Shown here piece by piece: positions 1 to 61,135 of a DNA stretch of 64,000 bases; position 1 is the stretch's first letter, and every line of letters begins with the position of its first letter. The notes under the pieces were generated by a model that was not told the DNA's origin, did not search any database, and was given only the letters and a program-made list of their open reading frames with translations. Origin of the DNA: Lepidodermella squamata (lineage: Eukaryota > Animalia > Gastrotricha); NCBI GenBank assembly GCA_047495785.1, contig JBLDXI010000024.1, positions 4,464,001 to 4,528,000 on the forward strand. The letters are read 5' to 3'. The translations under genes and the position numbers were made by a program.

Positions 1-734
1 GAAATAGCTCCGCCAGTTTTCGAACCTGTTGGAGAACGCAACCTTGCAAAACGTAAGCCCTCATCGAACTAATATAGCGCTTTTTATTCCATGTTACAAT
101 AGTCGAACTTTCAATCCACCGCTTTTCACGATTCATTGAGACGCAAATTGCGGACGAAACCTATGAAAGAGTAACGAAACGCGAGCGTTGTTTGATGCAC
201 TGGATGGACCTGAAGTTGCATGCTTCACGACTGCGGAGAGTGATGAACCCTCCTGCTCAGCGTCAGGTTCCTGCAACCATCGACAGCTCAACGAAGATCA
301 AAGACCCTAAGCTGTTCCTACATGGCGACAAAATTGTAACGCAACGAGGTCATTTCGTTAAGAACATCGAACCACTTCCCGAGCCGATTCTTCTAGACTG
401 GTCCCGCCAGATGCAAGTTAGCAATGCCAACCCACCAGTTTTGCCGAAGCAGATATTCATGCCTCAAATCGCCAAACCGGCTGTGCCTGACATCATGTTC
501 AAGGAAAAGTATGTCACGAAAGAAAGCCCAGTAGCAAAGCCACCAGCTCCGAATCTATCACAAAAAGGACCGCAAAAAGGACCGCATGTCAGTCCGGGTC
601 AGAAATCGCTGTGGGGTATGCTCTTCCCTAATAAGAAGCAGCCTGACAGTTTGCCAGTCGGGTCAGTTCGAGGAATGTACGACCCTAAGAAACAGGGTGG
701 TCGCAGTCAGTTAAATGCATATCCAACACATTGA
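1..734 (+). CDS. 3' end of PKD1-like paralog A: end of channel exon 1-52, 50-nt intron 53-102, last exon 103-734 encoding the Pro/Lys-rich cytoplasmic tail
   Basis: The tail ([12 protein letters not shown]...[35 protein letters not shown]...NAYPTH*) is clearly homologous to the last exons of copies B, C and D. The intron position matches (AAAC|gtaagc...aatag|TCGAA). Confidence 0.9.
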
Positions 735-812
735 ATGCAGAAACTGTAAAGCGATGACAACTTGGAAACATTTGTGAGTGATTTTTTGAACCAATCATTG
801 ACGGTGCAACTG

Positions 813-818
813 AATAAA
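813..818 (+). promoter_or_regulatory. Putative polyadenylation signal AATAAA of paralog A
   Basis: AATAAA ~80 nt after the stop codon. Similar signals follow copy C (44558-44563) and copy D (61172-61177). Confidence 0.5.
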
Positions 819-5880: not shown

Positions 5881-6302
5881 TTGTCGTTATCAGTCATCAG
5901 CTCAAATCGTTGTTAAAAATGAAACGTTGAATGCTTTAGTCCTAAATGTGATGACAAGCGTTATAAGTTAAAATTTCAAGGATAGAAAACAGGGGAGTTG
6001 TCGAAAGCCGAATTGCCAATCTGAGAAGTTCTGTTCTTGATCTAAGGCTGTATTACCTCAGATTTACAGCTACCGATGAAGGATTGCCCAACTAAGTAAA
6101 GATGGAAGTTAAAGTGGCCAGTAATCGGGAGTTTTAAACGATAGGTTAAAGCGATAGGTTCACTTTTTATATTGCTGTGAAAGGTATTTATCAGCCAAAA
6201 CATAAACCATGAATTCCAATAAATCACGTTAGTTTTAACTGCAGAGTTGAAACTTGGAATGGGGTTATCCCAGTCGTATAAAAGCTGACCCTAGCACGTG
6301 AG

Positions 6303-8513: not shown

Positions 8514-11500
8514 ATGAATTTCCATATCATCGCTATCATATTGCTCGTTGCTGGAATTCAAGGTTTTCAGTCAAAATGCTGAACTTGAATTCAATTACTT
8601 TTCGCATTTAACAGGAGTATCCGGAACAGTCAACTGTATCACTGCCGTTAATTGCAAATACGGAGGAACTTGTGTAGCTGGAATATGCTATTGCCCCTTG
8701 CCGTGGGGTGGACAAACGTGCAACAAAGCAAGTTCGTTATGCAGTTGTTTTATTGGCCAGATTTTGACTGATAACCATGACAGCTGGGGAATTTTGCAGC
8801 ACCAACGGTGTCAACTATCCCCTATGCCAAAACGGAGGAACGTGCCCGATTCTAAATAACGGCAGTTCCACCTATGTTAATCCGCAACGTGATTGCACTT
8901 GTGCTCCTGCTAATACCGGGCGCTGGTGCGAGTCATGTTAGTTGAGCACTTTCACCTACCCATTTGTTCTAATTATTATTCACAGTCGTTTGTCCAACGC
9001 CTTGTCAAAACAACGGCGTCTGCACTGCCCAGTTAACTTGTAACTGTACAGCAGGATGGACTGGATCAGCATGCACATCACGTAATTAAAAGCTAAACAA
9101 GAGCGTTTTTACTTCGATGGCAACACGATGAGTTATTAATACAGATAGGATTTTAAGATTTTAATATTCATCAACATCTATAAATCAATTCGTAGTCATA
9201 AGCTAAGAAGTACCAGGGCCATTAGTACCTTTCGAGGGCCATAGAGCACTTTTCTTACCGGGGTTATTTCCACCACGAGACAATACAAAACACAATTTAG
9301 TGTCAATTTACTACATTACATGTGAATATCCTTTCGTTTTTTCGAATATTCATACGACATTTGAGATCAAACATTTTATAACAATGATTTTGGTTTTATC
9401 GCTAAATTATCAACTGGGAAAGTTTAAAAATTGATTCAAATCAAAGGAAGCTTTTACGGTTTTAGCCTAAAAATGACAGCGATTTCATGGCATTGAAGCA
9501 GACTACTTTATTGCCCGATAAGTTTGTCACTCTCGTATGAAAGCGGCGGCCTCAATTCGAAATAATAAAGAACAGGCCTGAAATAAGGGGCGGTCTAAAA
9601 TATTTTGTTAGCGACGCGCCAAAACAACCACTTTGATGACTTTGATCGTACTTTAAGGAGCCCAACGTAATGAAGAAGTACGTTCGGCTTTATGAACTCT
9701 TATATCTGGACCTGGCCTGTCGCATCGCACGCACGATTTTGGTGGAATTTCGCGTGTGCGACACGACAGCTTAGATTCGTCCGACAGCAGGTAAAACAAC
9801 GTCCTAGTTCGGTCCACTTCAAGCGCGCAATCGAAGGGTAACAGTGGACTTGTGCGCGAAACTTGGAGGAATTGACAACGCACTATTACTCTAAGGCGCG
9901 AAACACCACATCCAAATTTTTAACAAAAGGGTGGCCGCGCGCACTAATGTCAAAAGGCTATTTCGAAAACAATGACGGCTTTTATACCAAATTAAAACTG
10001 AAACAATTCTCTATCAAATGACTACGAATTTCTTGCTTAATAAATTTAAATAAAAAATTTGTCAGCGCCCTTAATAATCCGCGAGGTGGTGCCGTGCTGA
10101 GTGAACATAATTAAATTATCAAATTTCGATGAAAATACGCGGAGATAGGGTAACTGATGTCGAAAATAATGATTTTTCTGGTTAAAAACTTGAAAGGAAA
10201 CCAAATTTGCAAAAAAACTTGACAAGTGTCGCGCGTGGCTAATTTTTATATGAAAGGAATATGAAAGGAATATTTCATATAAAAATTAGCCGCGCGCGAC
10301 ACTGCCTCAGCGCCCGCGCGTGTCATTGTTTTGTGCGCATACGACTGTGACTATCCCTGGCTGTCGTCCGCGGTTTTGATGCGACAGAGCTGCGACAGCC
10401 GCATGCGACGGTACGACACGTGTCGTACCTGTCGCACTTAGTGAATCCACCTTAACGTTGGGCTCTTAAAGTACAATCAAAGTGGATGTTTTGGCGCATG
10501 AAAATTCTCGACATGTGATGCAAGCATGCCATTTTAGCATTTTTGCATTTCATTACGTAATCCTGTACAACCTTGAGCAGTTACAAGTTTGAACATTTCA
10601 CGCAAATAACATTTCTTCGAAAACATGAGGATCTAGTCTTGGGAATTTTACTGAATATAGATATCGCTGTGATCTAACCCCAAGGTCTTTCATTAACCAT
10701 TTCACGGCGGGAAGGCCGACTTTGAACATTCGCAGAAATTTGAATTTGATGAATTCTTGATCGCCCTTTTGGGGAATATTGCTCTTCGATGTTGGCTACA
10801 AGGTTTTGAGAACAGGACACCTTTATCTTGCACGGTCACGACATACTAGCAATTTGAAAATAGTCAACCTTCGATTGAAATTTCGATTTTTTGAACTGAA
10901 AAGGTTTCTGTTTATTTTGTGATCCAACAAAAGATATCCCGTGTCCGCCATAGTCTCATTGACCTATATGTAAATTTTTTGAGTTGGAAATTAAAAATCC
11001 ACGCGCTATTGAAATTGAATCAAACCGGCAGAATTCGTCTTATCCGCCCTGACTTATACAGGCGGAGTGCGTGCATTTTGTGCTGCAAAAACTGTCACGA
11101 GGAAAAACTGGAAAATCTGAATTCAGATCTGAATGCTGAGCCTCTAAAACTTTTTTAACTGAATTTTGTTGGTGATATAAGTTAGGGAGTAATTTAGAAC
11201 ATAAAATTCCAAAACTGAACGCATTTGACACAGAAATTAGGTTGTTTGAAAAATCACCTGAAATCAGCTGGGCGGATGGGACGATAGATAGAGGAGATTT
11301 CAAGTAGTGACAAGGAGATTTCAAAATATCGTAATCAGGGCACTCGAAAACCCCTAACACTGCTGTCAAATATTTTATCCACCGCAGATAATTAATTCCC
11401 CTATGCGAAAAATTTGATTTGATTTGATTTAAACTGGCCTGATGATTCGATTTACAGTGAAAGTTGTCTCAACCGGACTCGGGTTGCGCCAGGCCGAAAG

Positions 11501-14486
11501 AAGTAGTCAAAAGGCAAAAAGCCACGCCCATCAATGGAGTGAATTTCGCGTGGCATGCGCTCAAAGTTGCAAGGGGTAGCCGGTACAATTTTGAGCACTA
11601 TAAATCTAAGACCTATGCAAAATGATTATAAAACAATGAACAAAGGCAACAAAAATCATTTTCTTTATTGTACCTTGTTGATCAGCCGTTTGTTCGAGTC
11701 CTTGCCTGAATGGCGGCAGCTGCACAGCACCAAACACTTGCATGTGTCCGGCTAATTTTACTGGCTCAACGTGTGCTGCAACAATCTGCTCGCCAGCGTG
11801 CTCCAACGGCGGAACATGTAACGCCCAGTTTACATGCAACTGCAATTCGTACTGGACTGGCTCTCGATGCACGACACGTGAGAAAATTCGAAAATGTGAA
11901 TAAAATTTGAGATGAATTGTTCTATCTTCAGCAACATGTTCGTCTCCTTGTCAAAATGGAGGCACATGCGTAGCTCCAAACAGTTGTTCTTGTCCTGTCG
12001 GTTGGACTGGTAAAACATGTGGCACATTCACGTGCCCAGGAGGCTGCGCCAATGGGGGAACGTGCGCTGGCCCTTCAACCTGTACTTGCACAGCGCAATG
12101 GCAGGGATCTAACTGCACTACTCGTAATCTCTCCTCAGCTATATTTGATAGCATGCCATTGATATCCTTGAAAATTAGCCGTTTGCCCAACACCGTGTCA
12201 AAATGGAGGCACTTGTTCTGCACCTGGCGTTTGTACATGTGCGCCAACGTGGATAGGAGCTAATTGTGAGACGCAAATTGCTAATAGTGAGCGTCCTAAG
12301 ACGTTGATAAACTGCAATCTGTCAAACCTTTCCTATTACAGTTTGTACACAAGATTCAGAGTGCGCGAACGGTGGAACGTGTACGAATGGATTATGCTAC
12401 TGTGTTGCTCCTTATACAGAACCAGATTGTTCATTAACAGGTAGGTTTCATTTCGAGATTGAATGGTTTAATGTGTAATTATTCGATCAACGCTAAGGAA
12501 CCAACGTCTGCTCTTCGAACGGCGTCGATTATCCGCGGTGTTCAAACGGCGGCACCTGCATCACTGTTAGCTCGGCGACACTATGCAGCTGCCCGGTTGG
12601 AGTTAGCGGTAGATATTGCGAAACAGGTATTTCAATTGCATTTCAGTAGCACGTTATGTTGATATGACCTTTTCCCAAATAGTTTTGCCTCGTAAGTGAT
12701 CTGATTTCCTAGTTCAAATCGGGCATAATCAACCTTCGACAGGATGCGAAAATATAGAACTAACAGCAATGCCATGGTGCGGTCTGATTGGCTCGACTGG
12801 GAATGGCTCTAACGCTATGACATCGCTCGGCTGGGCTCCGGTGAACCCCGACAGCAGGCTATTTTTGACTGTGAATTTACCTTACGAGTTCACAATATCA
12901 ACGGTCGAAGTCGGGAAAGGCACCCTTTCTGCTGGATATGTCACTTCTTACGCGATTTCCTTCTACGTGAAGCAGGCTCGGCTAGGGAATTTCTACTATC
13001 CCATCTTAACCGATCAGGACGACTCGTCGTCACCATGGAAGGTTTGCACGTGCGATTTCGGCTGATTAACGTGATTTCTATGTCCATTCAGTTATTTCCT
13101 GGCTACGACGGCGTTAGCCCTGCCACATCCAGGCTGTGTCCAAATATCCGTACTTCAGGACTGCGGCTTTGGCCGAAAAATTACACGAGTCCCAATTTTG
13201 CTATGACAGTTAAAATTTGGATTTGCTTACCCCATACTGGTTGCGTTACGTCAGGCACAGGGCTGTGTGCGTCGAACTGCGTCTGTCCTGTTGGCTACAA
13301 GAGCAGCTACAGTAAAAACTGTGGTAAGAATCAAATGCTTGGTTCTAAAATTTCAAATATGTTAGCATGTTATCAATTTCAGACATATGGAACATGCCAC
13401 CAGTGGATTGCGAGGATATCTTGATGCGAGACCGGACAGCAGCTGATGGCGTTTACACGATCTACCCGCCGGCAATGCCATCAATGCAAGTTTATTGCGA
13501 CATGACAAGTATAGGAGGCGGCTGGACAGTGTTCCAGAAGCGTATCGACGGCTCGGCGGACTTCTACCTGAACTGGGCTGACTACAAAGCTGGTTTCGGC
13601 TATTTAGCTGCTAATTTTTGGCTAGGAAACGACAACATTCGCCGGTTGACTGCGCAGAACTACAATAGCATTCTTGCGCTTTACATGGTTGCTCCTGATG
13701 ACAGCCGAGGCCTCGCTGTTTACAGGGACTTCTACTTAGAGGATGAATCTGACAATTACAGGTTCAGATCTAGCGGATTTTCGGGCGGAAATGCTGGTTT
13801 GTTAAAAGCCCTGACTTCTTCGACCTATTCGATTCTCTTTCAACAGGAGATTCGATGACGTACCACTTTGATACTGTATTCAGCACTAAAGATCGAGATG
13901 GTTCGAACTGGGGTAACTGTTCAGTTACGTTCAAAGGCGGCTGGTGGTAAGTCGTTACAATGCCCGGGCAACTTGGATTGCGCGGTTAAGTTATCTCACA
14001 AAGCATAGTTAGCGGAGTCAATTTTTTGCGGTCCGTTGTCGCAATTCATTCCAAACCTCAAACCCATCTTACTAAAGCTAGGTTCACGGACAATGCGACT
14101 GTCGCGGGTGTGTCGCACGAAAACAGCGACGCGACACACACAGATAGCCACGCATGAAATTTCTGTCGCGCGCGACAAACTGTTGTTGTGGCTCAACTTC
14201 GGGCTCCGTCCGACCCCCAAGCGTCGGTCGCGCAATTGCGGGTAAAAGCGGAATAAAATTATGAAAAATTACAAATAATTTTCTAAACATTTTTGGCCGC
14301 GCGTCAAAGGGCTAATTTACAGCTTCGCGGCGGTTTTCTTTCCGAAATGAAATATACACAATTCTCTATCGAATGAATATAGGGTTCTCGCGCAAATAAA
14401 TAAAATTAAAGCCCATACACGTAGTAACGAGTCTGAATAAACCTTTGTTTTTTGTGGTTTGCATTTGCTCTTGTGCGGGCGGGCGG

Positions 14487-14525
<39 letters not shown>

Positions 14526-45564: not shown

Positions 45565-45617
45565 GAACGTCACCTCCGACATGTTTCGGCTTTATTAGGC
45601 CATCTTCAGGGTCTAAC
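45565..45617 (-). ncRNA. Minimal type I hammerhead ribozyme (Penelope pLTR type), minus-strand copy
   Basis: Exact 53-nt reverse complement of 45724-45776. Confidence 0.7.
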
Positions 45618-45723
45618 AACAAATTTGTATTCTCAACATTCTGTTCCAATGCAAGCTTTAAGGCAAGTTTTACCTGCTTTCGTCACTAATCATGAACAAC
45701 AGGAGTAAAAAGTGCTATCAGTC

Positions 45724-45776
45724 GTTAGACCCTGAAGATGGCCTAATAAAGCCGAAACATGTCGGAGGTGACGTTC
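45724..45776 (+). ncRNA. Minimal type I hammerhead ribozyme (Penelope pLTR type), plus-strand copy
   Basis: Core CUGAAGA, U, stem II GGC(CUAAUAAA)GCC, GAAA, stem III containing palindromic ACAUGU, GUC cleavage triplet (45761-45763). Stem I is CC/GG plus CGUUA/UGACG with an internal loop. Confidence 0.75.
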
Positions 45777-47573: not shown

Positions 47574-48031
47574 CCCTATCTTAAGTCATTCTTAAGTCGC
47601 GATTAAGCGCCGTACGGCGCAGAAATTAAATAGCCATTTGCTTTTTGTATTTCAGCCTGACTGTCCAGGCTCGTTTTAAAATGCTCTACGCATGCGCAGC
47701 TGCTTATTTCATTATCCTCCTCATGGCAAGAAGTGAGCGAAACCTACTTATTTGGACTTGCCACTTACCCCAAGATGAAGGCTTTGCTCAAACAGGAATA
47801 TTATCTCAAATTCGGTGTGCCAAGTAGAATCCTCGAGCTAGGGGTTAAATTGGAACTATTTTGGCACCGAACTTTTAGTACAAAGGTCTTTCCCGGTTTT
47901 CCTGCCTGGACCTCCAGATGTGCCCCAAAACAGCCCGAAAACAACTGGGTGAAGTTGTATGTGCTGGCCATTGTCCCCTTCTTAGATACACCAATTTCAC
48001 CCCTTTGTTTACCCCACCGTTGTTTCCCTTA

Positions 48032-48252
48032 CAACTGAATGGCAGGGATCGATTAAATGGATCTAATATTTCTCATTGTAAGTCTGCTATCGAATGTGAT
48101 CAGTGTTTCAGTGTACGAAGCAGATTGAGGAAATGCTAATCCCTCTATACCATTCCCTCAATCCCCCTTGGGCTTCGTACACTGATCATTCGATAGCAGA
48201 TTTACAATGAGAATTATTAGATCCATTTAATCGATTCCTGCCATTCATAGTG
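48032..48252. mobile_element. ~220-bp MITE with ~85-bp TIRs and TA TSD, just upstream of paralog D
   Basis: ta|caactgaatggcagggatcgattaaatggatctaat...cagtgtacgaagc is inverted relative to gcttcgtacactg...attagatccatttaatcgattcctgccattcatagtg|ta. Confidence 0.75.
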
Positions 48253-48458
48253 TAACCATCAGATTGGGCTTCGCAACGCCCAACAGTTCAACACCTCTCT
48301 CTAAGCAGGAACAATAACTGGACGAGATAATCACCGTCCATCGTTCTAAGCTCGATCGGAGGACTACAAAAATTCAAGTTATGGCATCTGAACCATGACT
48401 AAATTGAACAGTTTCTTTCTGTTTCTTTCTAGTTTTTACTTTATGAATACGTCTCCGA

Positions 48459-51400
48459 ATGGATTTATGGCCTTCTGTGATATTGCTTTTGGCAATAAGC
48501 TCCGACAGTATGACGCAATCTTTTCTTATTCACCCTGAATAACAATTTTTCCTAACAGTTGTTGACTGTCAATGCGACAAAACATGCAGCAACGGGGGCT
48601 ATTGCAAAAACAACCAGTGTTATTGCCCTGCTCCGTGGGGTGGAGAAAAGTGTGACGATTCAGGTAAAATGCCTCGCAGGCAGTAAAGTAAAAGCTGACA
48701 TCAATCATTTTATAGGGATGGCCTACTGTTCATCTGCAGCTAGCGGGTCGCTTCCGCTATGCCAGAACGGAGGCACTTGTAATGGCAGTTGTATTTGCCC
48801 ACCAGGATACAGTGGGCGATTCTGTGAAATAGGTTTTAGTTTCAATTTCAATCTAAACTCGTCTTGCATTCCGTCATTTTACTAGTCCCATGCTCCCCAA
48901 CCTGTCAAGAAATTTGCACCTCGCCGTGTAAAAATGGAGGGAGTTGTGTGGCACAGGGTAAATGTTCCTGTCCCGCTGGCTGGACCGGGCCCACTTGCGA
49001 GACCTTCACATGCCCAGCAGGCTGTGCGAATGGAGGCACGTGCGTCGGACCTGAAACTTGCGCGTGCGTCGGACCCGAAACTTGCGCAGGATGCACTGCT
49101 GAATGGACAGGCACTGACTGTAGGACAGGTAAAATTGAAGTTCGAATTGCAATAAAAATGACCTTTGCTGAATGTTTCAGCACTCTGCACGGAAACGTGC
49201 ATGAACGGAGGAACATGTACCGCCCCGGATGTTTGCACTTGTGGTCCGAAATGGACGGGTTCAACTTGCAGCACGCCTACAACCGACAGTATGATTTCGA
49301 CTTTGTCCATTCGAGATAGGTAATACTGCCATTCTTTTTCAAGTTTGCACCGTTAGTAGCCAATGCGCTAATGGCGGCACGTGTACCAACGGTTTATGCT
49401 ACTGCGCCGCTCCTTATTCAGGATCAAATTGTACAACGACCGGTAACAAATTAGGCGCAGTAACAGTTCAGAATTACATTTTAATTTTCCTAAGGGACTA
49501 ATGTCTGCTCATCGAATGGCGTTGACTATCCTTGGTGTATGAATGGTGGAACATGTGCTGCTGTCGGCGGGGTCATGAAATGTAATTGCCCTCATGGTCT
49601 GGGTGGTCAATATTGTGAAATTGGTAGGAAAATTGCCCGTTTTTTTATCATGATGTAATTCAATAATCTTTCAGTGGTCAACCGTAAGTTTTGTTCAATG
49701 CTCCCAAGTAATTACTCAATGAAGGAATATGCGATGCAGAATGTGACAGCGATGACGTCACTCTCAAGTACAGCAGTTGGGGAGGTAGCATTTCGGCTTC
49801 CTCAGGCATCGCTGCCAATGCTCTAACGGCAGGCGGGTGGGTTCCAGCGACCACTGATCGAAGAGTTGTTTGGCTGCTAACCTTGCCGTTTGAATTCACG
49901 ATTTCGACCATCGAAGTCGGATCAGGCTCGAATGCTGCGGGCTACGTGACAGGCTATGCAATCTCCTTCGCCGTGAAACAAAAATATTTAGGGAGTTTTT
50001 ATTATCCTGTTCTGGTAAATCAATTGGCTTCGGATTCCGCCGTGAAGGTATGTCTGTTTGTAAGGAGGGGAATGAAGAACACGAGACCGTTCTAGGTTTT
50101 TCCTGGGTTCAATGGAACTGCTGCAGGAGTTTCGGAGCTCTGTCCTAATATAAGAACTTCCGGCTTGCGTCTTTGGCCTAAAACCTTCTCGGCATCGCCA
50201 TATGCAATGACAATAAAGATTTACGGCTGTCAGGCGCATTCCGGCTGTGTTCCTTCTGGGGCCGGTTCCTGCAAAACAACTTGCACTTGTCCCCTTGGCT
50301 ATGTGAACAGTTACACTGCAGGCTTCTGCGGTAAGGATATAGATATAGCTGATTTAAAGCGCCATACTCACGGCCCATTTCGATTTTTTCCGGTCCCGAT
50401 GCGCCAGTTGCGCAATTAGAGTTTTGTTTTTGCGCGAAACCGCATGTTACATTGAAAAAATCCGCGCTGCGTGCGTTGATGTCAAAGGTCTAACTTCTAA
50501 TATCGTGGTATCTTGAGTCTCAATTCCGAGACCAATTTGCAAGGCTCTATTTCTGATTATTATTTCATTTTTGGCTTACTCCAAATACAGAAACATTCGA
50601 GTTTGTGAACGTTTGAAAATGCAATAGTAATAAGAAATAAGGGGAAAAACGGCGTTAAGACGCTCTTTACAAAAAATTGTTACCCCTGTTTTTACGTGTT
50701 AGCTTAGATTTAAAAAAAGAAAAATGTTATAAATTAATTAATTTATTTATTTGAGAAGCCATATCACCCGGAAGAGGGCAGCTAAGCTTTCCCTTGATAG
50801 TTCTCAACACTTTTTAGCTTGAACCCTTGATTTTTCTGGCTGAGACAACGAACTCTGGATTCCAGATCGGGGAATATCGAATTTCTCCTTGACTAGCCAT
50901 AGAGTATTCCTATACATGCGCGTGGTAGAATTTAGCCATTGAAAGGAATACATACAATGTGATACTTCAGCAACCCCTTCCCCCTCCCGAGCTCAGCCGG
51001 GCCAGAGAACATGTAATGTAGAAAAAAGGGATACTAGCCATGGAGAAATGCGCGAAGTAGGATCCTCGAATTAAGGGGTATTTGTTTCATGCCCTAATTT
51101 TATGACCAAAGGGATTTTTGTAAAGTAGAATCCTTTAAAAAATCCTGCTGGGATTTTTCTACTTTGGCGTGTACAAAACCCCTCATTCCCCCGTACTTCG
51201 CGCCCTGATTCTCCCCGATCTGGAACCCTAAGTTAGTTTGGCTCAGCCAGCAGAATCAAGGGGTTCTGGGAAGAAAGCTTTAAGAGCTATCAAGAGGAAG
51301 CTAAACTGCCCTCTTCTTGGCGAAGAACGCCAGTCCATAGATCAGGTATTCGGTAAACTTCCTGAATTGTTCGATACAATGAGATTCGAGAGAGAAAGCT

Positions 51401-54400
51401 GGTGACGAAAATACTAATTTGTTAGGAAGGAATAACGATTTCCTCTATAAATACCTAAAGATCGGGATTAATGTGACTGATTGGGCTAGCTAATTGCCAA
51501 CCCAAATCATTGACGGGCAATCTAACTGAAAACACCCTTATGAAAGTGTAAAAAGCTGAAACCATATTATTCTCCGCTTCAGATAATTGGGCCATGCAAC
51601 CAATCGATTGCGAGGAAATTTTGATGCGCAGTACCTCGGTACTGCAGGACTCTTTGTACGTGATATACCCGCCGTCATTCCCTGCAATGAGCGTTTTCTG
51701 CGACATGACTCACGCCGGTGGAGGTTGGACAGTATTTCAACGCCGCTACACCGGCAGCCTTTCTTTCTACCAGACTTGGGCGAATTATAAGGCTGGGTTT
51801 GGCTCTACCTCAGTAGAACAATGGCTTGGAAACGATTATATCAACCATCTGACGTTTTATAACTACAATCCATTGCCCCTACTCGCTGTCTACATGATTG
51901 GTCCAGGTGATGAGCGCGGATTGGCTGTCCACAATGATTTCTATATCGATGACGAAGCTGGCAATTACACACTCCATATCGGGTCATTTGAAACGGGCAA
52001 TGCAGGTAAGTATTGATACTTGCCCTAATTATTCTGATTGATATTTTGGAACCAGGTGACTCGTTAATCTACCATAACAACCTTCCGTTCAGTACTTATG
52101 ACCGAGACAACTCGTTGTATTCAAACTGCACGAGCGCATACAGAGGCGGGTGGTGGTAAGCTTCACTGAAAAATAATTTTTGGAATATATTTTTTCCTTC
52201 GTCTGTCCTAGGTACGGAAACTGCCTCCATTCTAATCTGAACGGGTCAGGATTAAAAATTGGCCCATTGTAAGACATTATTTCGCTGTTTTCCAGAGTGT
52301 ATGGTTCAACAGTTTGGGGTCAAATGCCATGCCATAATTCGTTCAAAGGTTTCACAGTTGGGATGAAGACCACTCTGATGATGATAAGACGAAACAAACC
52401 TCACGAAGTATTTCCACGTAAGTATTTCTTAGCAGCTGGGGCTGTAAGTAACGCTCTGATTCAGTTCCATCTGCCTTGAAACCGGTTGACTGTGATGATA
52501 TTTCGAGAACCCGGCCCTTTTCAACGAGTGGCCAATATCTAATCTATCCCGGAGGGTCTACAAGTCAGGTCTCGGTGTTCTGCGAAATGGCAGCTCAGGG
52601 CGGTGGGTGGACCGTAATCCAGCGCAACATAAATAGTGATATCACCTTCAACACTACCTGGGCCGCCTATTCTGGGGGTTTTTACGGTGTCTCGTATTTG
52701 ACTAGCTCTTACTATAAAGGCAATGACATTATTTACCAAATCGTAAATGACGCCAGCACGGGAATTCAGTATCGACTGGTCGTTACTTTGACAGACAGCA
52801 CTGGCCGGAAACGATCTGCAGCTTACAACACCTTCCGTTTGCTGGATAACGTCAACTACACTCTATCAATTTCGGGCTATAATTCTGTTGTTAATGAGAA
52901 TGCCGGGGATTCGCTTACAACATCGAACAATCAGCCGTTTCAGACGTACGACAAAGCTCAAGGTCGAGTTTGCGGACCTAAGCGACCAGGTGGCTGGTGG
53001 TTCAAAGTTCCAACCAACGGTGACCAGGTCAATCCTGATTGTTCAGATGCGAATCTCAACGGACCTTACGTCAATGCATGGGAAATGGGGATATTCTGGA
53101 ACTCTTTGACAGGCAAAAATACGTCACTAACCTCGAGCGTCATGATGATTAAGCCTTGTAATTTCTGAAACATGAAATTCCACAGAGTATTGAGGTTTAC
53201 TTTTTTAGATACTGTCAAGCCCATGGATTGTATGGATGTGTATAAAACGAATTCGTTGGTCTCTGGGGTTTTCTGGATTTATCACCCGGTTGCTGGCCCA
53301 TTGCAAGTTGTCTGCGATCCCTCGGTCTACTTTACAGGGACGCCCGGCTGGACTGTGAGTCTAGCAGGTTATTCGAATATTTCCCCTAATTCATAGCCCT
53401 TAGGTCATTCAAATGCAAGTCTACAATTCCACAACTTTTGCGAGAACATTCGCGGAGTACAGAGCGGGATTTAGAGTTAGCCCGTTCTTGCAGACAACAG
53501 ACTATTGGATTGGTAAAACTTTTAAAATTTCTTCAGTATTTTTTCATTTCTGTATATAGGCAACGAGAACTTGTACATGATGACGAAAGATGCAGCCTAT
53601 CAGCTGGTGGTGAACGTAGGACTTACTAACGGCACGACTTTGAAGGCCCTCTATGATGACTTCCAAGTTGGAAGCGCATCTGAGGGCTACAAGCTTTTCG
53701 TGGGCAACTATCAAGGAGACGCTGGAGATATGCTGACCGCTAAGCACAATATCATGCAATTTTCAACGTACGATCAAGGCCCAGCTTATCTCTGCTTTTC
53801 AAGCTATAAAATCAGCGGCGGATGGTGGCTGCCTGCAGACTGCTCATTCGACTCGAATGCAAACAACAAAATGTCTTCAAGTGACGTTAACGCTACATTA
53901 AAATGGGGTTCGTTGTCTGTCAAAACGTTCAGGATGGCTATTCAGCGGAAACAATGGCGTAAGTTACGATTTCTGAACGCAATCCGACTTATGATTTCTA
54001 CAATTTGCAGCCTACCTGAGAAACGTGGCCAACGCGAAATCCCGGGTTATCTCTTCAAAATACGGCATTGTCACGCATGAATGTAATAAAGGCTTCACCG
54101 CAAGCGGCTCTAATGAGAGAGTTCTTTCTACGACTTACGACATTTATTCCGGCAGCACTTTTACGTGCACTCGTAAGTTTGCTGAACCCTGTATCGCAGT
54201 GAAAGTTAAAAATGTATGCATTATAGCTACGCCTGTGCCTAACGACTGTGGCAGTAATCCGACTTCCTCGGCAGCGTTCTCATTCAGCGACCCTCTCACA
54301 GGTTACTTCTCCATGTATTGTGACCAGGAAACGATGGGTGGAGGCTGGAATGTTATTCAGCGTCGGATTAATGGGGCGTATTCCTTTTCTCGTACGTTGA

Positions 54401-57400
54401 CTGTGTACGAAACCTTGTTTGGCTCTCTAATGGGCAGTTTTTGGCTGGGAAGTGCGAGAATTCGATCGATGACTCAAGCTGCTGATTATGAGCTGTTGAT
54501 TGAAGTCGTCCTGGACAACAGCTGGGGTTTTGCTTTGTATAGCAACTTCTACACCTCAATATCTGATAACGTCCTAAGCGTTTCGGGATACAGCAATGAC
54601 TCAACCGCCGGAGATTCATTGACGCCTCTGTCATCTCTACCTTTCATCATCGATCCTTGCGGAACAGGAGCATGGTGGTTGGCCCAACCTAGCTGCTCGC
54701 TAGCCAACATCACAAGCAACTTGAACAATTTGATGGGTAACCAAAGTCAAGGCTACATGAACACTTATTGGAAGACTTTCAGCTCGGACGCAACTGCGCC
54801 TTTAATGCGTACCGAGATGAAAATTAGGCGCATCAGGCCGACAAATCAATACATCAGAGCACCGAATTTTCAGTGCAGTCCTACTACTGGCTCTTCGTAC
54901 ACCTTTGAAAACCTTACTACAGCGGCGGCATGTATGGCTGGCTGCACCGCTTACAAAGCTTGGAACTGCCAGGTTGTAGTCTTCAATAAACTTAATTATT
55001 TATGCACTATGAAAAGCGACTATTGCGAGCCGGGCATAGGATCTGTTTTCACGGATGTTGATTCATACTATCGAAACGAGCTGCCTCGCCATGTCTCGAA
55101 AACTTGCGGATCTCCGCCAGCAATGAGAGGCACGACTCGCCTAATCGTGGGCATGCCAACCGTAATGTCGGTGAATTACACCTGTACAGTTAACAGCAAC
55201 TATAGCACTGTGCTAACATGCAACGCTACTACCAAATTCTGGAACGGAAATTTCCTCGATTGTCCTGATTGTTCGGGCATTGGGTCTTGTATGAATGGAG
55301 GCGTGTGCAACGGCACTAACACCTGCCGCTGCACTCCAGGTTGGACAGGTCCTTTATGCACTGTACAGATCATTGATTGTTCGGGCATTGGACCATGCCT
55401 CAATGGCGGTGCCTGTATTGGTGTTAATGTTTGCCAGTGTTCATCTGGCTGGAACGGAACCAACTGCACGATACGTAAGTTCCAACTCCATTACGAACAT
55501 CACCCTAAACATATTCGATGTAATTTCAGCATTATGTTCTGCGATTGGGGGATGCCAGAACGGAGGATCCTGTGTTGCCCCTAATACGTGCGCATGTGCA
55601 GCAGGCTGGGTCGGCCTCGATTGCTCTGTTAAAACGAATGTAACAGATGCGTGTTCTTCGATTGGCGGGTGCAAGAATGGAGGGTCCTGCGTTAGCCTCA
55701 ATAATTGTACATGTATTGGAAACTGGACCGGCACTGATTGCTCTGTTAAAATTAACATAACAGAACCGTGTTCCTCATTTGGCGGATGCAAGAACGGTGG
55801 GTTCTGCATAAAGGCTGATGCTTGCGCCTGTTTTGGAGGCTGGACCGGCAAGGATTGCTCGGCGAAAATGAACAAATCAGATTCTGCTGTTTCAATCGCC
55901 TCCTTAGCCGACCTGCCGCCTCAGGTCCTAATCGCTGCAGCTTCGTCAATCAGCTCTATGGCGATGGAAGCTTCTGAATCCATCACTTCTTCGGAGAACG
56001 CAACGGCTATGGCTGCGGCTTCTTCCGCTTTCATGGCTGGAATGGCCCCCGTTATGGGTAAATACGCTGAAGTAGCAGCTGATATGGCCCCGGCAGCTGT
56101 GACGAACGTCACGGTGGGCTTTGCGTCTGCAACAAGTTCTGTTATGTTTGCAGTGTCCGATACTGTCGATTCATCAAGCGGATCAACGACAACAACGCCA
56201 GCTCCGTCAGAAAAAACTAGTAAATGTAAATCGGTAGCAGTGGAATCTGATGACGATGAAGAGACAACAGCTCCAACTGCTGTCTTTTCAACTGATGACG
56301 TAAGTTTGAGCCGAAAATCACGCTTGAATGAATACATTTCGGTTGTTACAGACGTCTAAGCTGTATGGAAACTTCAATGAGATGATTGAGCAAATGCTGA
56401 AAATTGTCGAAATCAATGTGAAATCCGGCAAAAACTTCACGTTCAACGGCAAATTTTTCTCGATTGCACTCAGCGTCGTTGATATGAGAACGTTGGCAAG
56501 GCTGAAGCTCGAAACTATTCATGCCTCTGTAGAGTTCCCAAATACAACGTCGGCGGTTGAATTCATCGATTCCAAAGCTTCGCAGGTCAGCCTTAAAGAT
56601 TCTGACACTGTCACCGTTGCTCTTACGGCCTACATCGTCAATGTCCTCGATCCGGACCAACCATTCAACCTGCCGACGATTTCAGTCAAGGTTCTCTATC
56701 AGAAGAAAGAGCTGACTCTCAAGAAAGGCTACGCTACTAAGATAACAGGCAAACCTTCTGCAACCCGAACAGCAAAGCTGAGCGGCCAAAAATCGGAGTC
56801 TCAGTGCGTCGTAAGCGAGATGAAATGCGATGTCACTGCGAATGCTGATGCCATAGGATCGCTGGCGCTTTTCCCAGTCTCTACGGGTTCAGGCGATTTC
56901 ATTTTGACTTTTCCGACCATCAGATACAACTATACGGCTTATCTTTCCCTTAACAGTACCCCCACTGTCAGAAACTACACCTGGTCAATTTATGTAACTC
57001 AGAAAACTGTCAATTGCAGCGTTAATGCCACGCTTGGTGAACTCAAGTCAACCTACAATCCAGAAGTTGAATTGAGAGTGGTCATCCCTCAGACTGCTCT
57101 ATTCGATTTCGCTGAATTGCAAGGACTGTCTTCAAGCGAAAATGTCACTTTCAAGCTACATGTTTACACTAAAAAAGACTTTTCAAGTTTCTCGACTATG
57201 GACGACCTGCCAGCAGATGCTTGCGAACTACAGCGATGCTACGGTTACCACCTCAAGATAGGATTCGCTAGGGCAAAATCAACAAGTTCAAGGAGAAGAC
57301 GCGATGCATCGGGTTCAAGCTCTGATGACGATTTTGAGGTCGACCCCAGTTCGAATGAATCAGCCGTTGTCTTCAAATCTTCCTACTTTGGCGATTTTGG

Positions 57401-60400
57401 GGCCGACCTTGTGGTGTCACCAAATTCAATCGAATTTTCGGATATTTTCGCCAATTTCGCTACTCTCGTATCAGATAATGCTTACGTCCTCGCTTTTCAA
57501 GTTGCCGCTGTGGTCTTTTGCATCATTGGCATTATTGTTGTCAGCCAATTTGATAAGCTCGACATCAAGGAGTGGGCTTTCATGTCTCTGAAGAGCAACA
57601 AGCCGTACGAAGTGCATAAATATCTCGTTTCCGTCGATCATTTCGGCGTTAAAAGCTACCACCTGAAGCCTGTGGTCCTACTCCGAGCTTACGGTGATAT
57701 CAGCGACACGAACTGGCGCGTCCTTGAAGATTGCGAGCGAGATTCAAATTTCAACGGCAAGCGTCCAGCTAATTTCATGTTGACCACCACCATGCCGCTC
57801 GGCCACATCGAGGCAATCGAAATTAGACTACACAGCCGATACAGGGCAGCGCCAGGCAATAAGCCACTCGAGATGCAAATTGCCAAAGTGGTTATAGTGG
57901 ATGTTGCGAAAAGCCAAAAATTCGTGTTCTTAACCAAGTCGCCTATGAAAAGTGGTGACATGGTGTCTAAGCAGCTAGCATCTGAGGATGACATTAAAGG
58001 CTTCCGATATCTGGTCAGCGCTCATTCTCGAGTTGGCGTTTTCAGCTCTCACCCTTGGCTATCGATCGCGAGGCGTCCTCTTCCCAGCAACTGGACCCGA
58101 TGCGAACGGCTGGCTTGTGTAACCAGCGCTCTATTCATGGCAATGCTAGTCAATGCGATGTTCTACGGGAAGGAAAGTCAATCGCCCCGGGTTGGCATAA
58201 AAATCGGGGGATACTTCCGCCTGTCCTGGTTCACAGTCTACACAAGCTTCATCGGATGCGTCATTGTCATCCCTCCAACTGCAATTATGGCCTTCATTTT
58301 CAAACGAATCAGACGTCGATCAGCTGAGAATAGCCAGTACACCACGATATTCAATGTTGCCCTAGGATTCCGACAAAGAAATCCTGACGACAAAGAAAAG
58401 AAGCCCTTCCAGCTTCCTTATTATTTCGCAATTGTCGCATGGTTTTGTAAGTCAATAAGTTTAACATAAAACAGCACTCCATTTTCTTCTTTTAAGTGGT
58501 TGCTGGGTGCATCGGGGCATCATCTTTCTTCATCGTCATGTACAGTTTGATGTGGGGCAAGGAGAAGTCTCTGCAATGGCTTAGCGGGATGATCATGAGC
58601 GTTGTTCAAGACATAATCATAATCCAAACAGTCAAGGTCGCGCTGTTGTCTCTATGCAGTTCAACTTTACTATCCCTTCCGGATGATGGTCTGGATATTG
58701 GCAAGATGGCATTCTCCAAGAATAACTCTAGCAAGAAAACGGAGCTCTTCAAGCGCATGCGGAACATCATCGCAGGGATTTTCCACCACATCATTTACGT
58801 CGTGGCTTTTGCAATCGTAATCTCAGCAACGCAAAACACTCTAGCCTATCAGCAAGTTGGCGATTTGAAGCCACTCGTTGAGATGCCTACTGTACCTCAG
58901 ATGGGCGTGATTAATGACTACAGCCAGATTTATTCATGGTTGAACAACAATCTGTTGCCACAGTTTTTCACTGCGAACCAGCTGAAAAAGGGCCTGAACT
59001 TCAACCTGAAAAATATCTACCAAGTTCTAAATCACGACGTCGTGGTTCTTGGTCCAGTTCGCTTGCGACAGCAACGAGTTCAACCTTGTAAGCACGACCA
59101 TGAAGAATGTTGTTGAGAAATTTTCATTTTCTTGCAGATTATTGTCCCTTGGAGACGTCGCCAATACCACTGATCAATCAGAAATTCACCAAACTGCTCA
59201 TTTTGAACACGACGAAGTGCCAAAATCCATATGTTGACCAACTTGGTATCGGCGAAACCACTGAACGGCGGCAATTTTCGAATTTATATTGGACCTTCAA
59301 CGAAAGTATTACAGCTTGGTTGGCTGAGAACGTCACGACTGAGCAGGCTCCGTGGATTTATCGAGAAGACAGCGGCATTCCTTACTCGGGATTTCAAGCT
59401 AGTTACTCGAGCGGTGGCTATTACGTAGACCTCCCAGTCACACTTAAAAAAGCGAGGGCGTTCGTCACTCAGCTCCAGTCGAGAAGATGGCTGGATAACG
59501 CAACTTCAGTCTTGTTTGTTGACATGGTCCTGTTCAATGCTCAGGTCAATTTGTTCATCGCTGTCAAAGTGGTGTTCGAAGCCTTAAGTGCTGGAGGTAT
59601 GACCTATCACGCAAGAATGTACCCTCTGCAGCTCTATCAATACATCGGGGCTAGCTCGATCTTCGTTTTCGCGATTCAAGGCATCTGGATCTTGCTGGTC
59701 ATCTCGCATCTGATTAAGATTTTCATTCAGATGAAAAAGCAAGGAATCACAAAGTTCCGAAAAGATGGATGGAATTTGCTGGAGCTGTGCCAGATATTGA
59801 TATCCTTGGCCATCGTTGGATTGTTTATAGCTCGAATTCTGGTAGTGATGAAGGCTGTAACCCGGCTTCAGACCGACCGAACTTCATTCGTGAACTTCGA
59901 TCTTCTGGTCAACTGGGAAGCGTTGATGGCCAATCTTTACGGAATCACATTTTTCATGACGATGCTGCTGTTTTTCCGCCATCTCACCTTTAACAAGTAC
60001 TGGTGTATCTTTTTGGGAACGCTCTCCAAGGGCAAGGCGGATATATACTCATTCCTGTTCACTTTTGTTGTCATCACACTGTTATTCGCCACACTGGGTT
60101 ACTTGAGCTTGAACACAACATGCGCTGATTTTCAATCATTTACTGCTTCGATCATGACCCTGGTTCAAAATATCATCGGAGTAACTGGGTCCTTGATGTC
60201 ATTGAGTTTCACCTCGCGTTACATCATGCTTTTCTGCATGGCCTACTCGACAATCGTCATGTTTTTGGCTGTTCAGGTCTTCATGACCATCATTTCAGTC
60301 ACTTACAGCCAGGTAGCTGAGAACGCAGAAGAAAACACAAACTGGGACTATGAACTATCCGGGTACATGGCGGCAGAGATCTCGCGTGCTGTAGGCAATA

Positions 60401-61135
60401 AGGAAGAAAAGAAGAAGGTGAAAACAGCGTCGGTTTTCAGGCCAATCGGCGAAAGAAATCTGGCGAAATGTAAGTTGCTTTAATTCGCCATGTTTTTCTG
60501 ATTTTATTCGATATTTCTTTTCAGTGGAAATGACGATCCACCGTTTGTCACGTTATGTTGAGTCCCGCGTTGCAGATGATACTATCGAGCGAGTTGCGAA
60601 ACGCGATCGATGCCTCGTGCACTGGATGGACATGAAATTGCGTGGGTTGCGTCTTCGCAAATTTATGAACACGGTTATGCGTCAAAAGACAAAAGCCACC
60701 AACGCACCTGCGAAGATTGAAGATCCGAAGCTGTTCATACAGGGCGGCAACATTGTCAGCCAACGGGGTCATTTCATTGAAAAGGCCCATCCACCTCGAA
60801 TGCCTGAGCCCCTTCCCAATTCTCAAAATTGGGGTTATAACATGCAGCCTGGTTACGATGGCAGCGCGCAATTAATGCCCAACCGCATGGTCTTGCCTCA
60901 AATAGCAAAACCCGGCATGCCAAAAATGGAGAATAAAATCATTCCAGCGCCCGTCCCGCCGCCAAAAGGTCCGCCTGCTAAGCAATTCGTCAATCCTGGA
61001 GATAAGTCACTGTGGGGCATAATTCGCCCGAATAATAAGCAACCTGGTAGCTTGCCGGTTGGTTCTGTACGTGGAACGTATGATCCCAAGAAGCAAGGTG
61101 GCGGCAATCGACTGAACCCCCACCCCGCACACTAG
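48459..61135 (+). CDS. PKD1-like paralog D (multi-exon), shortened ectodomain: ~7 N-terminal EGF, 1 sushi, ~5 proximal EGF
   Basis: 49-nt signal-peptide exon [16 protein letters not shown] (48459-48507). ORFs 52476, 54025, 56328, 58496, 59107 and 60524 are collinear with B and C. Confidence 0.9.
50765..51322. mobile_element. MITE with ~110-bp diverged TIRs in an intron of D
   Basis: gaagagggcagctaagctttcccttgatagttctc...ttccagatcgggga is inverted relative to tccccgatctggaa...gagctatcaagaggaagctaaactgccctcttc. Confidence 0.65.

What the first reader, a model, noticed from the sequence alone, without database searches (positions are those of the whole stretch)
1..61135. Tandem family of polycystin-1-like channel subunits with four fibrinogen-related lectin-type domains: candidate ligand- or glycan-gated receptor-channel repertoire
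Seen: at least four head-to-tail paralogs. The three complete ones join EGF, discoidin-like, 4xFReD, PAN, sushi and EGF modules to a full 11-TM polycystin-1 core, and the ectodomains differ much more than the membrane core. Known: PKD1-family proteins usually carry LRR, C-lectin, PKD or REJ modules, and invertebrate FReDs (ficolins, tachylectins, FREPs) are often carbohydrate or pattern-recognition domains. I do not recognise a described FReD-polycystin fusion. Inference: an expanded family that couples immune, chemosensory or gamete recognition to a cation channel, presumably with a PKD2-type partner, which is not in this window.
Basis: partly seen in the sequence, partly recalled or inferred. 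Interest (0 to 1): 0.9.

Follow-up and report, generated by a model that had tools for sequence, protein, structure and literature searches.

The report
Fibrinogen-headed polycystin-1-like receptor gene array
Three intact neighbouring genes (plus the tail of a fourth) of a small-intron invertebrate each encode a giant polycystin-1-type membrane channel subunit whose outer part carries four lectin-like fibrinogen domains, a rare and undescribed but not unique variant of a receptor family already known for lectin-type heads; its function is untested.

Summary
The window carries three complete head-to-tail genes: A 8514-27837, B 29681-44468 and C 47681-61135. It also holds the last 734 bases of a fourth. 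Each gene can be read without a stop through 24-36 GT-AG exons, mostly with ~50-nt introns.

The predicted order is: signal peptide, EGFs, four Fibrinogen_C domains, PAN, one to three sushi-like modules, an EGF stalk, then a polycystin-1 core. The core was checked by Pfam, hydropathy and a confident AlphaFold model. It has a GAIN fold, TM1, PLAT, TM2-5, a polycystin/TOP domain and a PKD channel.

- **Not confirmed:** the "discoidin-like" module.
- **No transcript evidence:** the only public run holding this DNA is genomic.
- **Divergence:** heads are 47-66% identical in protein, cores 85-93%. All parts have dN/dS around 0.05-0.2.
- **Step in synonymous divergence:** between A and B it halves at the stalk/GAIN boundary. 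This suggests gene conversion or mosaic ancestry.
- **Precedent:** outside this genome I found the FReD-plus-polycystin combination only in two amphioxus gene predictions, and in no paper.

The function as a ligand-binding subunit of a TRPP channel is inferred by analogy. This scan has already reported the same family at several other places in this genome.

The parts
1..734 (+). 3' end of an upstream fourth paralog: end of channel exon (1-51), intron (52-101), cytoplasmic-tail exon with stop (102-734)
   Evidence: BLASTN 1-925 vs 27098-28061, 76%. Translation and GT..AG intron read.
8514..27837 (+). Gene A, about 28 exons, about 3667 aa; open from signal peptide to stop, all introns GT-AG
   Evidence: Gene models, curated. 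5' exons found by tblastn with B and C N-termini.
8514..8562 (+). Gene A signal-peptide exon ([17 protein letters not shown])
   Evidence: Hydrophobic start followed by a donor site. Same 49-nt exon design as gene B.
8615..12626 (+). Gene A N-terminal EGF exons (about 7 EGFs), interrupted by a 2.6-kb intron (9082-11685)
   Evidence: EGF cysteine motifs. Homology to B and C.
12713..13323 (+).
   Evidence: Conserved in A, B and C. No Pfam, hhalign or HMM support for discoidin.
13383..19872 (+). Gene A four fibrinogen-related domains: FReD1 13383-15543, FReD2 15584-16273, FReD3 16324-18934, half-CCP exon 18986-19153, FReD4 from 19205
   Evidence: Pfam Fibrinogen_C, E 2e-37, 7e-36 and 2e-28. Local HMM finds four full-length hits. 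FReD2 matches angiopoietin-like, MFAP4 and tachylectin-5A structures at E 1e-26 to 5e-28.
19861..20692 (+). Gene A PAN/apple module and three sushi(CCP)-like modules, in the same exon as FReD4
   Evidence: PAN_1 at 23 bits (cut-off 21.4). Sushi at 18.5 bits (below cut-off 20.7). Cysteine pattern. AlphaFold of this exon failed.
21154..22407 (+). Gene A EGF stalk (3-5 EGFs) and Ser/Thr-rich linker; ends at the donor of the 53-nt intron that joins head to core
   Evidence: Pfam EGF families. Intron sequence read.
22461..24552 (+). Gene A exon encoding GAIN-like domain (GPS motif lost; RKRR in a disordered loop), TM1, PLAT, TM2 to TM4
   Evidence: AlphaFold pLDDT 84.9. GAIN Z 10-13.5, PLAT Z 14, polycystin-1 Z 6.8. 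Foldseek PLAT matches. Alignment. RKRR at residue 313 of the exon.
24603..27149 (+). Gene A exons for TM4/5, TM6, polycystin (TOP) domain and six-helix channel domain with pore helix
   Evidence: Pfam Polycystin_dom 8e-22 and PKD_channel 4e-25. PDB sequence matches: PKD2L1 8.5e-44, PKD2 1.5e-39, PKD1L3 7e-30, PC1 7e-13. Hydropathy.
27200..27837 (+). Gene A cytoplasmic tail exon and stop; AATAAA/ATTAAA motif at 28047
   Evidence: Homologous to the tails of B, C and the upstream copy.
29681..44468 (+). Gene B, about 36 exons, about 3979 aa. Signal peptide 29681-29729, FReD1-4 32217-35576, EGF stalk of about 13 EGFs 36424-39608, core exons 39663-41757, 41808-42398, 42449-43777, tail 43825-44468
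   Evidence: Pfam. Models.
47681..61135 (+). Gene C, about 24 exons, about 3441 aa. Signal peptide 47681-47732, FReD1-4 51583-54891, only one sushi-like module, EGF stalk 55105-56299, core exons 56352-58446, 58497-59087, 59138-60469, tail 60525-61135
   Evidence: Pfam. Missed FReD3 exon 53404-53512 recovered by eye. Models.

Best explanation
Each of the three complete genes most likely makes one type-I membrane protein of about 3,400-4,000 residues that belongs to the polycystin-1 (PKD1-like/REJ-like) family.

Shown from sequence and models:
- A signal peptide.
- A large extracellular arm: EGFs, an unassigned beta-rich module, four fibrinogen-related domains, PAN, sushi-like modules, an EGF stalk of variable length and a Ser/Thr-rich linker.
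- A GAIN-fold domain that has lost the HL/T self-cleavage motif.
- TM1, PLAT, TM2-5, a TOP/polycystin domain, a six-helix TRPP-type channel domain and a cytoplasmic tail.

Inferred by analogy with sea-urchin REJ/PKD2, PC-1/PC-2 and PKD1L3/PKD2L1:
- The protein is the ligand-binding subunit of a heteromeric cation channel formed with PKD2-type subunits encoded elsewhere. Its own filter has IGV where PKD2L1 has LGD, so it lacks the filter aspartate.
- Binding of a glycan or acetylated ligand, or of a partner's glycan, by the lectin-like head changes gating or PLAT/tail signalling.

The array keeps a nearly uniform core while the heads differ. Part of this uniformity comes from more recent shared ancestry or gene conversion of the 3' half.
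For: One gene, not two:
- In all three copies the last stalk exon is joined in frame to the GAIN exon by a GT..AG intron of 52-54 nt.
- The downstream part has no signal peptide of its own, although its first 375 residues form an extracellular GAIN fold.
- In a 39-42% identical relative on metagenome contig L001, a sushi exon is likewise spliced in frame onto the stalk/GAIN/channel reading frame.

Intact genes:
- No internal stops, all introns GT-AG.
- dN/dS is 0.05-0.2 in every part.

Domains:
- Pfam.
- Four FReDs per gene.
- GAIN, PLAT and polycystin-1 fold matches.
- 11 TM segments.
- The channel domain matches PKD2L1, PKD2, PKD1L3 and PC1.
- 1,023 polycystin-family relatives in the representative library.

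Analogy:
- Lectin modules in REJ/PKD1 proteins, and REJ3 with PKD2 in sperm (PMC1934368; PMC2120838).
- The PC-1 C-type lectin domain activates PC-1/PC-2 through TOP-domain glycans (PMC7728438).
Against: - No RNA evidence. The only public run holding this DNA is genomic and shows no splice joints.
- Exon borders in the EGF regions come from my own ab initio plus homology model and are approximate.
- Lectin activity is unproven. Only FReD1 keeps the DRD calcium-loop motif in the sequences shown; FReD2-4 have altered or shortened P-domain loops, read from the sequences and compared with motifs I recall.
- The channel domain is closer in sequence to PKD2/PKD2L1 than to PC1, so a homomeric channel or no channel activity cannot be excluded.
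- No PKD2-type gene was examined.
Confidence: 0.6

Rival explanations
1. The head and the core are two separate genes: a secreted FReD/EGF lectin, and a polycystin that starts near the GAIN exon. They merely lie end to end.
For: - The closest database relatives (P0001, P0003) are listed as 1,584-1,632-aa proteins that start just before the GAIN region.
- An ATG lies at 22491 in copy A.
- Another note of this scan reports a channel-less copy of the ectodomain nearby (s1-374168, not tested here).
- No RNA data.
Against: - Those database proteins come from prokaryote-style ORF calling on metagenome contigs. In L001 a canonical intron joins an upstream sushi exon in frame to that ORF.
- In all three window copies only 52-54 nt separate the parts. 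These are bounded by GT..AG and keep the frame.
- The putative downstream protein would lack a signal peptide for a 375-residue extracellular GAIN domain.
Confidence: 0.07
2. The proteins are single genes, but the FReDs are structural or protein-binding modules, as in tenascins and angiopoietins. The molecule would then work mainly as an adhesion or mechanosensory receptor signalling through PLAT and the tail, not as a glycan-gated channel.
For: - The best solved matches of FReD2 are angiopoietin-like proteins, MFAP4 and tenascins as well as tachylectin 5A and ficolins.
- The calcium-loop motif is altered in FReD2-4 (sequences).
- The heads evolve under purifying selection.
- A long EGF stalk and mucin-like linker are typical of adhesion molecules.
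Against: - PKD1-family heads with proven or likely sugar binding are common.
- The channel domain is well conserved, 85-93% identical between paralogs with dN/dS 0.06, and PKD2-like. This argues that ion conduction or pore assembly matters.
Confidence: 0.22
3. The lectin head acts in cis or in trans on glycans of the channel's own TOP domain, or on a PKD2 partner. It would be a built-in activator, as proposed for the C-type lectin domain of PC-1, rather than a sensor of outside ligands.
For: PMC7728438 shows CTL-dependent activation of PC-1/PC-2 that needs a TOP-domain glycan. The window proteins have a TOP domain (Polycystin_dom).
Against: - With the self-cleavage motif lost, release of the head would need another protease.
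- Heads that bind a conserved partner glycan would not be expected to differ by 35-50% between paralogs.
Confidence: 0.08
4. The copies are decaying or unexpressed duplicates without function.
For: No expression data. Copy A has four unusually long introns.
Against: About 3,400-4,000 codons each are open, with no frameshift and conserved splice sites. dN/dS is far below 1 in every segment.
Confidence: 0.03

Closest known systems
Sea-urchin receptor-for-egg-jelly proteins (suREJ1/3, SpREJ1-10), PKD1 family
   Same: - A multigene PKD1-family set with lectin-type modules and EGF in the ectodomain.
- GPS/GAIN region before TM1, then PLAT, with up to 11 TM.
- REJ3 pairs with PKD2.
- A sugar-polymer ligand triggers ion fluxes (PMC1934368, PMC2120838).
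   Different: - REJ proteins carry C-type or SUEL lectins, PKD repeats and the REJ module. Here there are four FReDs, PAN, sushi and EGF stalks, and no REJ or PKD-repeat hit.
- The GPS cleavage motif is lost here.
Vertebrate PKD1L2 / PKD1L3 (with PKD2L1)
   Same: - 11-TM PKD1-like subunits with lectin heads.
- PKD1L3 also lacks REJ and is filed in the family on 11 TM, GPS and PLAT.
- The channel domain matches PKD1L3 chain 7d7e_A at E 7e-30.
   Different: - Different head modules.
- The vertebrate proteins keep GPS (Pfam PF01825).
- They are single genes rather than a tandem array.
Branchiostoma lanceolatum predicted 'PKD1L3' proteins (CAH1271112.1 = P0075, and P0274)
   Same: The only other proteins I found that join Fibrinogen_C to PLAT, Polycystin_dom and PKD_channel.
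   Different: - One FReD, not four.
- It comes with F5/8C and a C-type lectin, and an intact GPS motif (HLT).
- The core is only a distant relative (rank 75, E 7e-25), so the fusion probably arose independently.
- These are automatic gene predictions and are not described in any paper I found.
Lingula anatina PKD1-like paralogs (XP_013384713/14, XP_013397161)
   Same: - The closest named relatives of the core (33% identity).
- They also have 'FFGSF' in place of the HLT cleavage motif.
   Different: Their heads are MAM, CUB, fn3 or death-domain modules. They have no FReD.
Ficolins, tachylectin 5A, FIBCD1, mollusc FREPs (FReD lectins)
   Same: Same domain fold. FReD2 matches tachylectin 5A at E 2e-26 and ficolins at about 1e-23.
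   Different: Those are secreted or single-pass lectins with one FReD. Here four FReDs in a row are tethered to a channel-type membrane core, and binding-site conservation is uneven.

Membership tests
Polycystin-1 (PKD1-like) family | Eleven transmembrane helices, the last six forming a TRP-like channel domain | tested here: met
   Hydropathy gives TM1, TM2-5 and TM6, then five more segments plus a pore helix, in all three genes. PKD_channel Pfam E 4e-25. The model matches polycystin-1 chain 8z6b_A over residues 358-697 (Z 6.8, 22% identity).
Polycystin-1 (PKD1-like) family | PLAT/LH2 domain in the first cytoplasmic loop, right after TM1 | tested here: met
   No Pfam hit. However, model residues 409-543 match lipase and lipoxygenase PLAT domains (Z 14, rmsd about 2 A) and align with the PLAT of P0075.
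Polycystin-1 (PKD1-like) family | GAIN domain with a GPS autoproteolysis motif (HL^T/S) before TM1 | tested here: not met
   The GAIN fold is present (Z 10-13.5 to CD97, CELSR1 and BAI3). The motif position reads SYFGDFG, without Cys, His or Thr. So the fold is met and the cleavage motif is not. The Lingula relatives P0006-8 also lack the HLT motif at this position.
Polycystin-1 (PKD1-like) family | Polycystin (TOP) domain between TM6 and TM7 | tested here: met
   Pfam Polycystin_dom E 8e-22, 2e-21 and 6e-22 in A, B and C.
Polycystin-1 (PKD1-like) family | REJ module and PKD repeats in the ectodomain (present in most members, absent in PKD1L3) | tested here: not met
   No REJ or PKD-repeat Pfam hit in any long exon. 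Short exons were not all scanned.
Polycystin-1 (PKD1-like) family | C-terminal coiled coil that binds PKD2 | not tested
   The tail exon is conserved at 52-66% between copies. No coiled-coil prediction was run.
Polycystin-2 (TRPP2-like) pore-forming subunits | Six-TM protein with the L-G-D selectivity filter | tested here: not met
   The protein has 11 TM and a giant head. In the alignment to PKD2L1, the LGD position reads IGV.
Fibrinogen-related domain (FReD) lectins | Fibrinogen_C fold | tested here: met
   Pfam E down to 1e-40. Four per gene by local HMM. PDB matches.
Fibrinogen-related domain (FReD) lectins | Intact calcium loop and acetyl/sugar-binding pocket in the P domain | tested here: inconclusive
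   FReD1 keeps a DRD loop and a C-H-S-x-N-L-N-G stretch in copy A. FReD2 reads DQP, FReD3 DRG, and FReD4 is shortened (sequences). Pocket residues were judged from motifs I recall, not from a structural alignment.

The most novel reading that the evidence does not exclude
The family is a receptor repertoire built on a 'variable head, constant core' plan. Many lectin-headed polycystin subunits would share one channel core that is kept uniform by gene conversion. Each would present a different FReD/EGF head, and together they would serve contact chemoreception, for example mate, prey or self/non-self recognition by ciliated sensory cells or sperm. This would be the first ion-channel family organised like an innate-immune or chemoreceptor repertoire.
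Probability: 0.2. Interest if true: 0.8.

Novelty: new variant of a known kind. Interest (0 to 1): 0.5.

Why it matters
What activates polycystin-1-type proteins remains largely unsettled. In this family a well-understood ligand-binding fold (FReD) is wired to a well-conserved TRPP core, and the family exists in many natural head variants. That would give a tractable system to test whether ligand binding by the ectodomain gates polycystin channels.

Two further features bear on open questions:
- The loss of the self-cleavage motif together with a conserved dibasic site bears on how GAIN-domain receptors are activated.
- The step in synonymous divergence at the head/core boundary offers a clean case of concerted evolution confined to one half of a gene.

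Tried and rejected
- **Transcript evidence.** The single public run that holds the stretch is genomic DNA. Its contigs cross the introns and show no joints.
- **'Discoidin-like' module.**
  - Pfam on both exons found nothing.
  - hhalign against the amphioxus F5/8C region gave probability 0.1.
  - A local HMM against 273 polycystin-family proteins gave nothing below E 0.5.
  - The domain is split by an intron that holds a stop, so it has no reference. I therefore did not send it to Pfam or AlphaFold as typed letters.
- **AlphaFold of the FReD4-PAN-sushi exon.** With a three-sequence alignment it failed (pLDDT 29). PAN and sushi therefore rest on Pfam and cysteine patterns.
- **JGI metagenome contigs.** Two scans for relatives found none.
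- **Search from the nearest relative P0001.** It found no annotated close relatives of 900-2,856 aa. Whether related species share the FReD head is therefore unknown.
- **Contig L003.** It shows no recognisable head modules in 2.3 kb upstream.
- **Positive selection.** It could not be tested properly. Synonymous sites in the heads are saturated and only three sequences are available.
- **Pseudogene reading.** Rejected.


Full report
**What is there**

The window is eukaryotic DNA (42-46% G+C) with very short introns. Long + strand reading frames recur three times. Pfam assigns them as follows:
- Fibrinogen_C, E down to 1e-40.
- PAN_1.
- Sushi, weak.
- Several EGF families.
- Polycystin_dom.
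- PKD_channel.

Self-BLAST shows three full units and the 3' end of a fourth at the window start. The membrane-core half is 74-82% identical in DNA and the head half 65-70%. The frame changes between long reading frames are canonical introns of about 50 nt, for example GTATAT...TTTTACAG at 22408-22460.

**Gene models**

No spliced aligner or RNA was available. I therefore wrote a dynamic-programming exon chainer using codon log-odds, splice-site weights and a bonus for tblastn similarity to the other copies. I curated its output by eye.

| Gene | Coordinates | Exons | Length |
|---|---|---|---|
| A | 8514-27837 | 28 | 3,667 aa |
| B | 29681-44468 | 36 | 3,979 aa |
| C | 47681-61135 | 24 | 3,441 aa |

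All introns are GT-AG, the median intron is 51-55 nt, and there are no internal stops. Each gene begins with a short signal-peptide exon. Borders in the EGF regions and around the unassigned module are approximate, and relaxed thresholds produced some read-through exons that I corrected. An AATAAA or ATTAAA motif follows each stop within 40-210 nt.

**Architecture**

From the N-terminus:
- Signal peptide.
- Six or seven EGFs.
- A conserved beta-rich module of about 180 residues.
- Four FReDs (local HMM: four full-length hits per gene).
- PAN.
- Three sushi-like modules in A and B, one in C.
- An EGF stalk of about 3-5 (A), 13 (B) or 5 (C) repeats.
- A Ser/Thr-rich linker.
- The core.

*The 2.09-kb exon.* Pfam leaves it blank. 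I aligned it with 65 relatives and folded it, giving pLDDT 84.9. The fold searches gave:
- Residues 1-355 match GAIN domains: CD97 Z 13.5, CELSR1 11.8, BAI3 10.8, latrophilin-3 10.3.
- Residues 409-543 match PLAT domains of lipases and lipoxygenases (Z 14, rmsd about 2 A; Foldseek probability 1.0).
- Residues 358-697 match polycystin-1 in the PC1/PC2 complex (8z6b_A, Z 6.8, 22% identity).

*Membrane topology.* Hydropathy gives TM1, TM2-5, TM6, and after the TOP domain five more segments plus a pore helix.

*Channel exon.* Its sequence matches are:

| Solved chain | E-value |
|---|---|
| PKD2L1 | 8.5e-44 |
| PKD2 | 1.5e-39 |
| PKD1L3 | 7e-30 |
| PC1 | 7e-13 |

In the alignment to PKD2L1 the filter LGD position reads IGV.

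*GPS position.* The HL/T motif is replaced by SYFGDFG, as it is (FFGSF) in the nearest named relatives from Lingula. An RKRR (A), RKKR (B) or RRRR (C) site lies 20 residues upstream, in the only disordered loop of the model. That point is the subject of separate notes of this scan. My data agree with them.

**One gene or two**

Evidence for one gene:
- The head-to-core intron is 53, 54 and 52 nt in A, B and C, and keeps the frame in each.
- The core has no signal peptide of its own, although it starts with a 375-residue extracellular domain.
- The closest relatives in the databases are metagenome ORFs of 1,584-1,632 aa, 35-46% identical. They only look head-less. On contig L001 a sushi exon and a Thr/Ser-rich stretch lie directly upstream and join the ORF in frame through a GTAAGT...TATAG intron.

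Against this stands only the lack of RNA. The single public run with this DNA is genomic. Its summed contig depth rises about ten-fold over 23925-24900. That fits many near-identical copies of this core segment in the genome, but depth summed over contigs is a poor measure.

**Evolution of the copies**

Protein identity between copies:

| Region | Identity |
|---|---|
| Ectodomain parts | 47-66% |
| GAIN | 72-82% |
| TM1 to S6 | 85-93% |
| Tail | 52-66% |

dN/dS is 0.05-0.07 in the core and about 0.1-0.2 elsewhere, so every part is under purifying selection.

The proportion of synonymous differences between A and B is 0.69-0.85 (saturated) up to the stalk. From the window that starts in the stalk (residue 1994 of A, before the GAIN exon at 2120) it drops to 0.36-0.66 for the rest of the gene. 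The short introns of the core are slightly more alike than shuffled controls (0.65-0.72 against 0.55), whereas most head introns are not clearly so.

The uniform core is therefore partly due to younger shared ancestry of the 3' half, through gene conversion or exchange of head cassettes. Selection on synonymous sites is an alternative that I cannot exclude.

**How unusual is the fusion**

- Of the 150 best representatives of 1,023 polycystin-family hits, only one carries a FReD.
- Of 120 long PKD1-like proteins found from a Lingula core, none does. Their heads carry MAM, CUB, fn3, C-lectin, SUEL lectin, F5/8C, WSC, LRR, laminin G, VWA, REJ and PKD repeats.
- Of all 273 family members held locally, one carries a FReD.

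That one, with a 95% identical sister, is a Branchiostoma lanceolatum prediction named PKD1L3. It has F5/8C, one FReD, EGF, a C-lectin, GPS, PLAT and a channel. Its core is only distantly related to ours, so the fusions are probably independent.

Full-text searches found no paper pairing polycystin with fibrinogen-related domains. The PKD1 family is, however, known for lectin modules and for multigene sets (PMC1934368). The C-type lectin of PC-1 has been shown to activate PC-1/PC-2 (PMC7728438).

Other notes of this scan report the same family at several other places in this genome, one claiming at least 28 genes. I did not test that count.

**Likely mechanism**

*Shown:* an intact, selected, single-reading-frame FReD-headed polycystin-1-type protein with a PKD2-like channel domain that lacks the filter aspartate.

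*Inferred:*
- It is the receptor subunit of a heteromeric TRPP channel with PKD2-type partners.
- The head binds a glycan or acetylated ligand, or a partner's glycan.
- Because self-cleavage is lost, any release of the head would need another protease.

Rivals are an adhesion or mechanosensory role without lectin activity, a cis-activating head, separate genes, and dead copies. I rate them 0.22, 0.08, 0.07 and 0.03.

**Organism**

Not identified.
- The closest named cores are from the brachiopod Lingula.
- One of the nearest ESM Atlas clusters is mainly rotiferan.
- Other notes of this scan guess a rotifer.

I did not test this.

**Verdict**

This is a new variant of a known kind and not categorically new.

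Noticed in passing
window 23397-23530 (gene A), and equivalents in B and C: The GPS self-cleavage motif is replaced by SYFGDFG. A dibasic RKRR, RKKR or RRRR site sits about 20 residues upstream, in the only disordered loop (residues 306-322) of an otherwise confident GAIN model. The Lingula relatives P0006-8 also lack the HLT motif.
   Followed up: partly
window, genes A vs B, boundary near 22000-22500 / 39200-39700: Synonymous differences between A and B fall from saturation (0.69-0.85) to 0.36-0.66 at the stalk/GAIN border and stay low to the stop. This suggests gene conversion or mosaic ancestry of the 3' half.
   Followed up: partly
window 28571-28769, 45565-45776, 48036-48247: Three imperfect palindromes of about 200 nt, with outer arms of 41-61 nt that are 93-98% complementary and a predicted folding energy of about -130 kcal/mol. 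Two lie upstream of genes B and C and one in the first intron of C. The arms of the first two share an ATGTTTC[CG]GCTTT stretch. They could be a MITE-like element or a hairpin RNA locus.
   Followed up: partly
window 62143-62215 (-): A tRNA-Arg (anticodon ACG) gene lies about 1 kb downstream of gene C (Rfam 53.5 bits; ARAGORN).
   Followed up: yes
window 3544-5886 (-): A run of overlapping minus-strand reading frames in different frames, between the upstream copy and gene A. They have no significant Pfam hit. One resembles uncharacterised arthropod and mollusc protein clusters, with a DUF7869 cluster among the weaker neighbours, so this is probably a decayed mobile element.
   Followed up: partly
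window 9082-11685, 13947-15332, 16470-18371, 25194-25820 (gene A): Gene A has four introns of 0.6-2.6 kb where B and C have about 50 nt. These are probably insertions. One holds a 138-codon minus-strand reading frame (17362-17775) with no Pfam hit.
   Followed up: no
window 36424-39608 (gene B): The EGF stalk of B has about 13 single-EGF exons of 96-102 nt, against 3-5 in A and C. It includes a recent internal duplication (37014-37287 vs 38190-38464, 77%). Stalk length therefore varies by exon duplication.
   Followed up: partly
window 23925-24900: In the one genomic run that holds this DNA, summed contig depth is about ten times that of the flanks. This is consistent with many near-identical copies of this TM2-TM5 segment elsewhere in the genome.
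   Followed up: no
L001 1-1500 (ENA metagenome contig): The nearest relative of the core (39-42% identity) has an upstream Thr/Ser-rich stretch and a sushi exon, spliced in frame onto the ORF that the database lists as a stand-alone protein. The contig ends before any further head modules. Genes for ankyrin-repeat, PAN and ABI/SH3 proteins follow downstream.
   Followed up: partly
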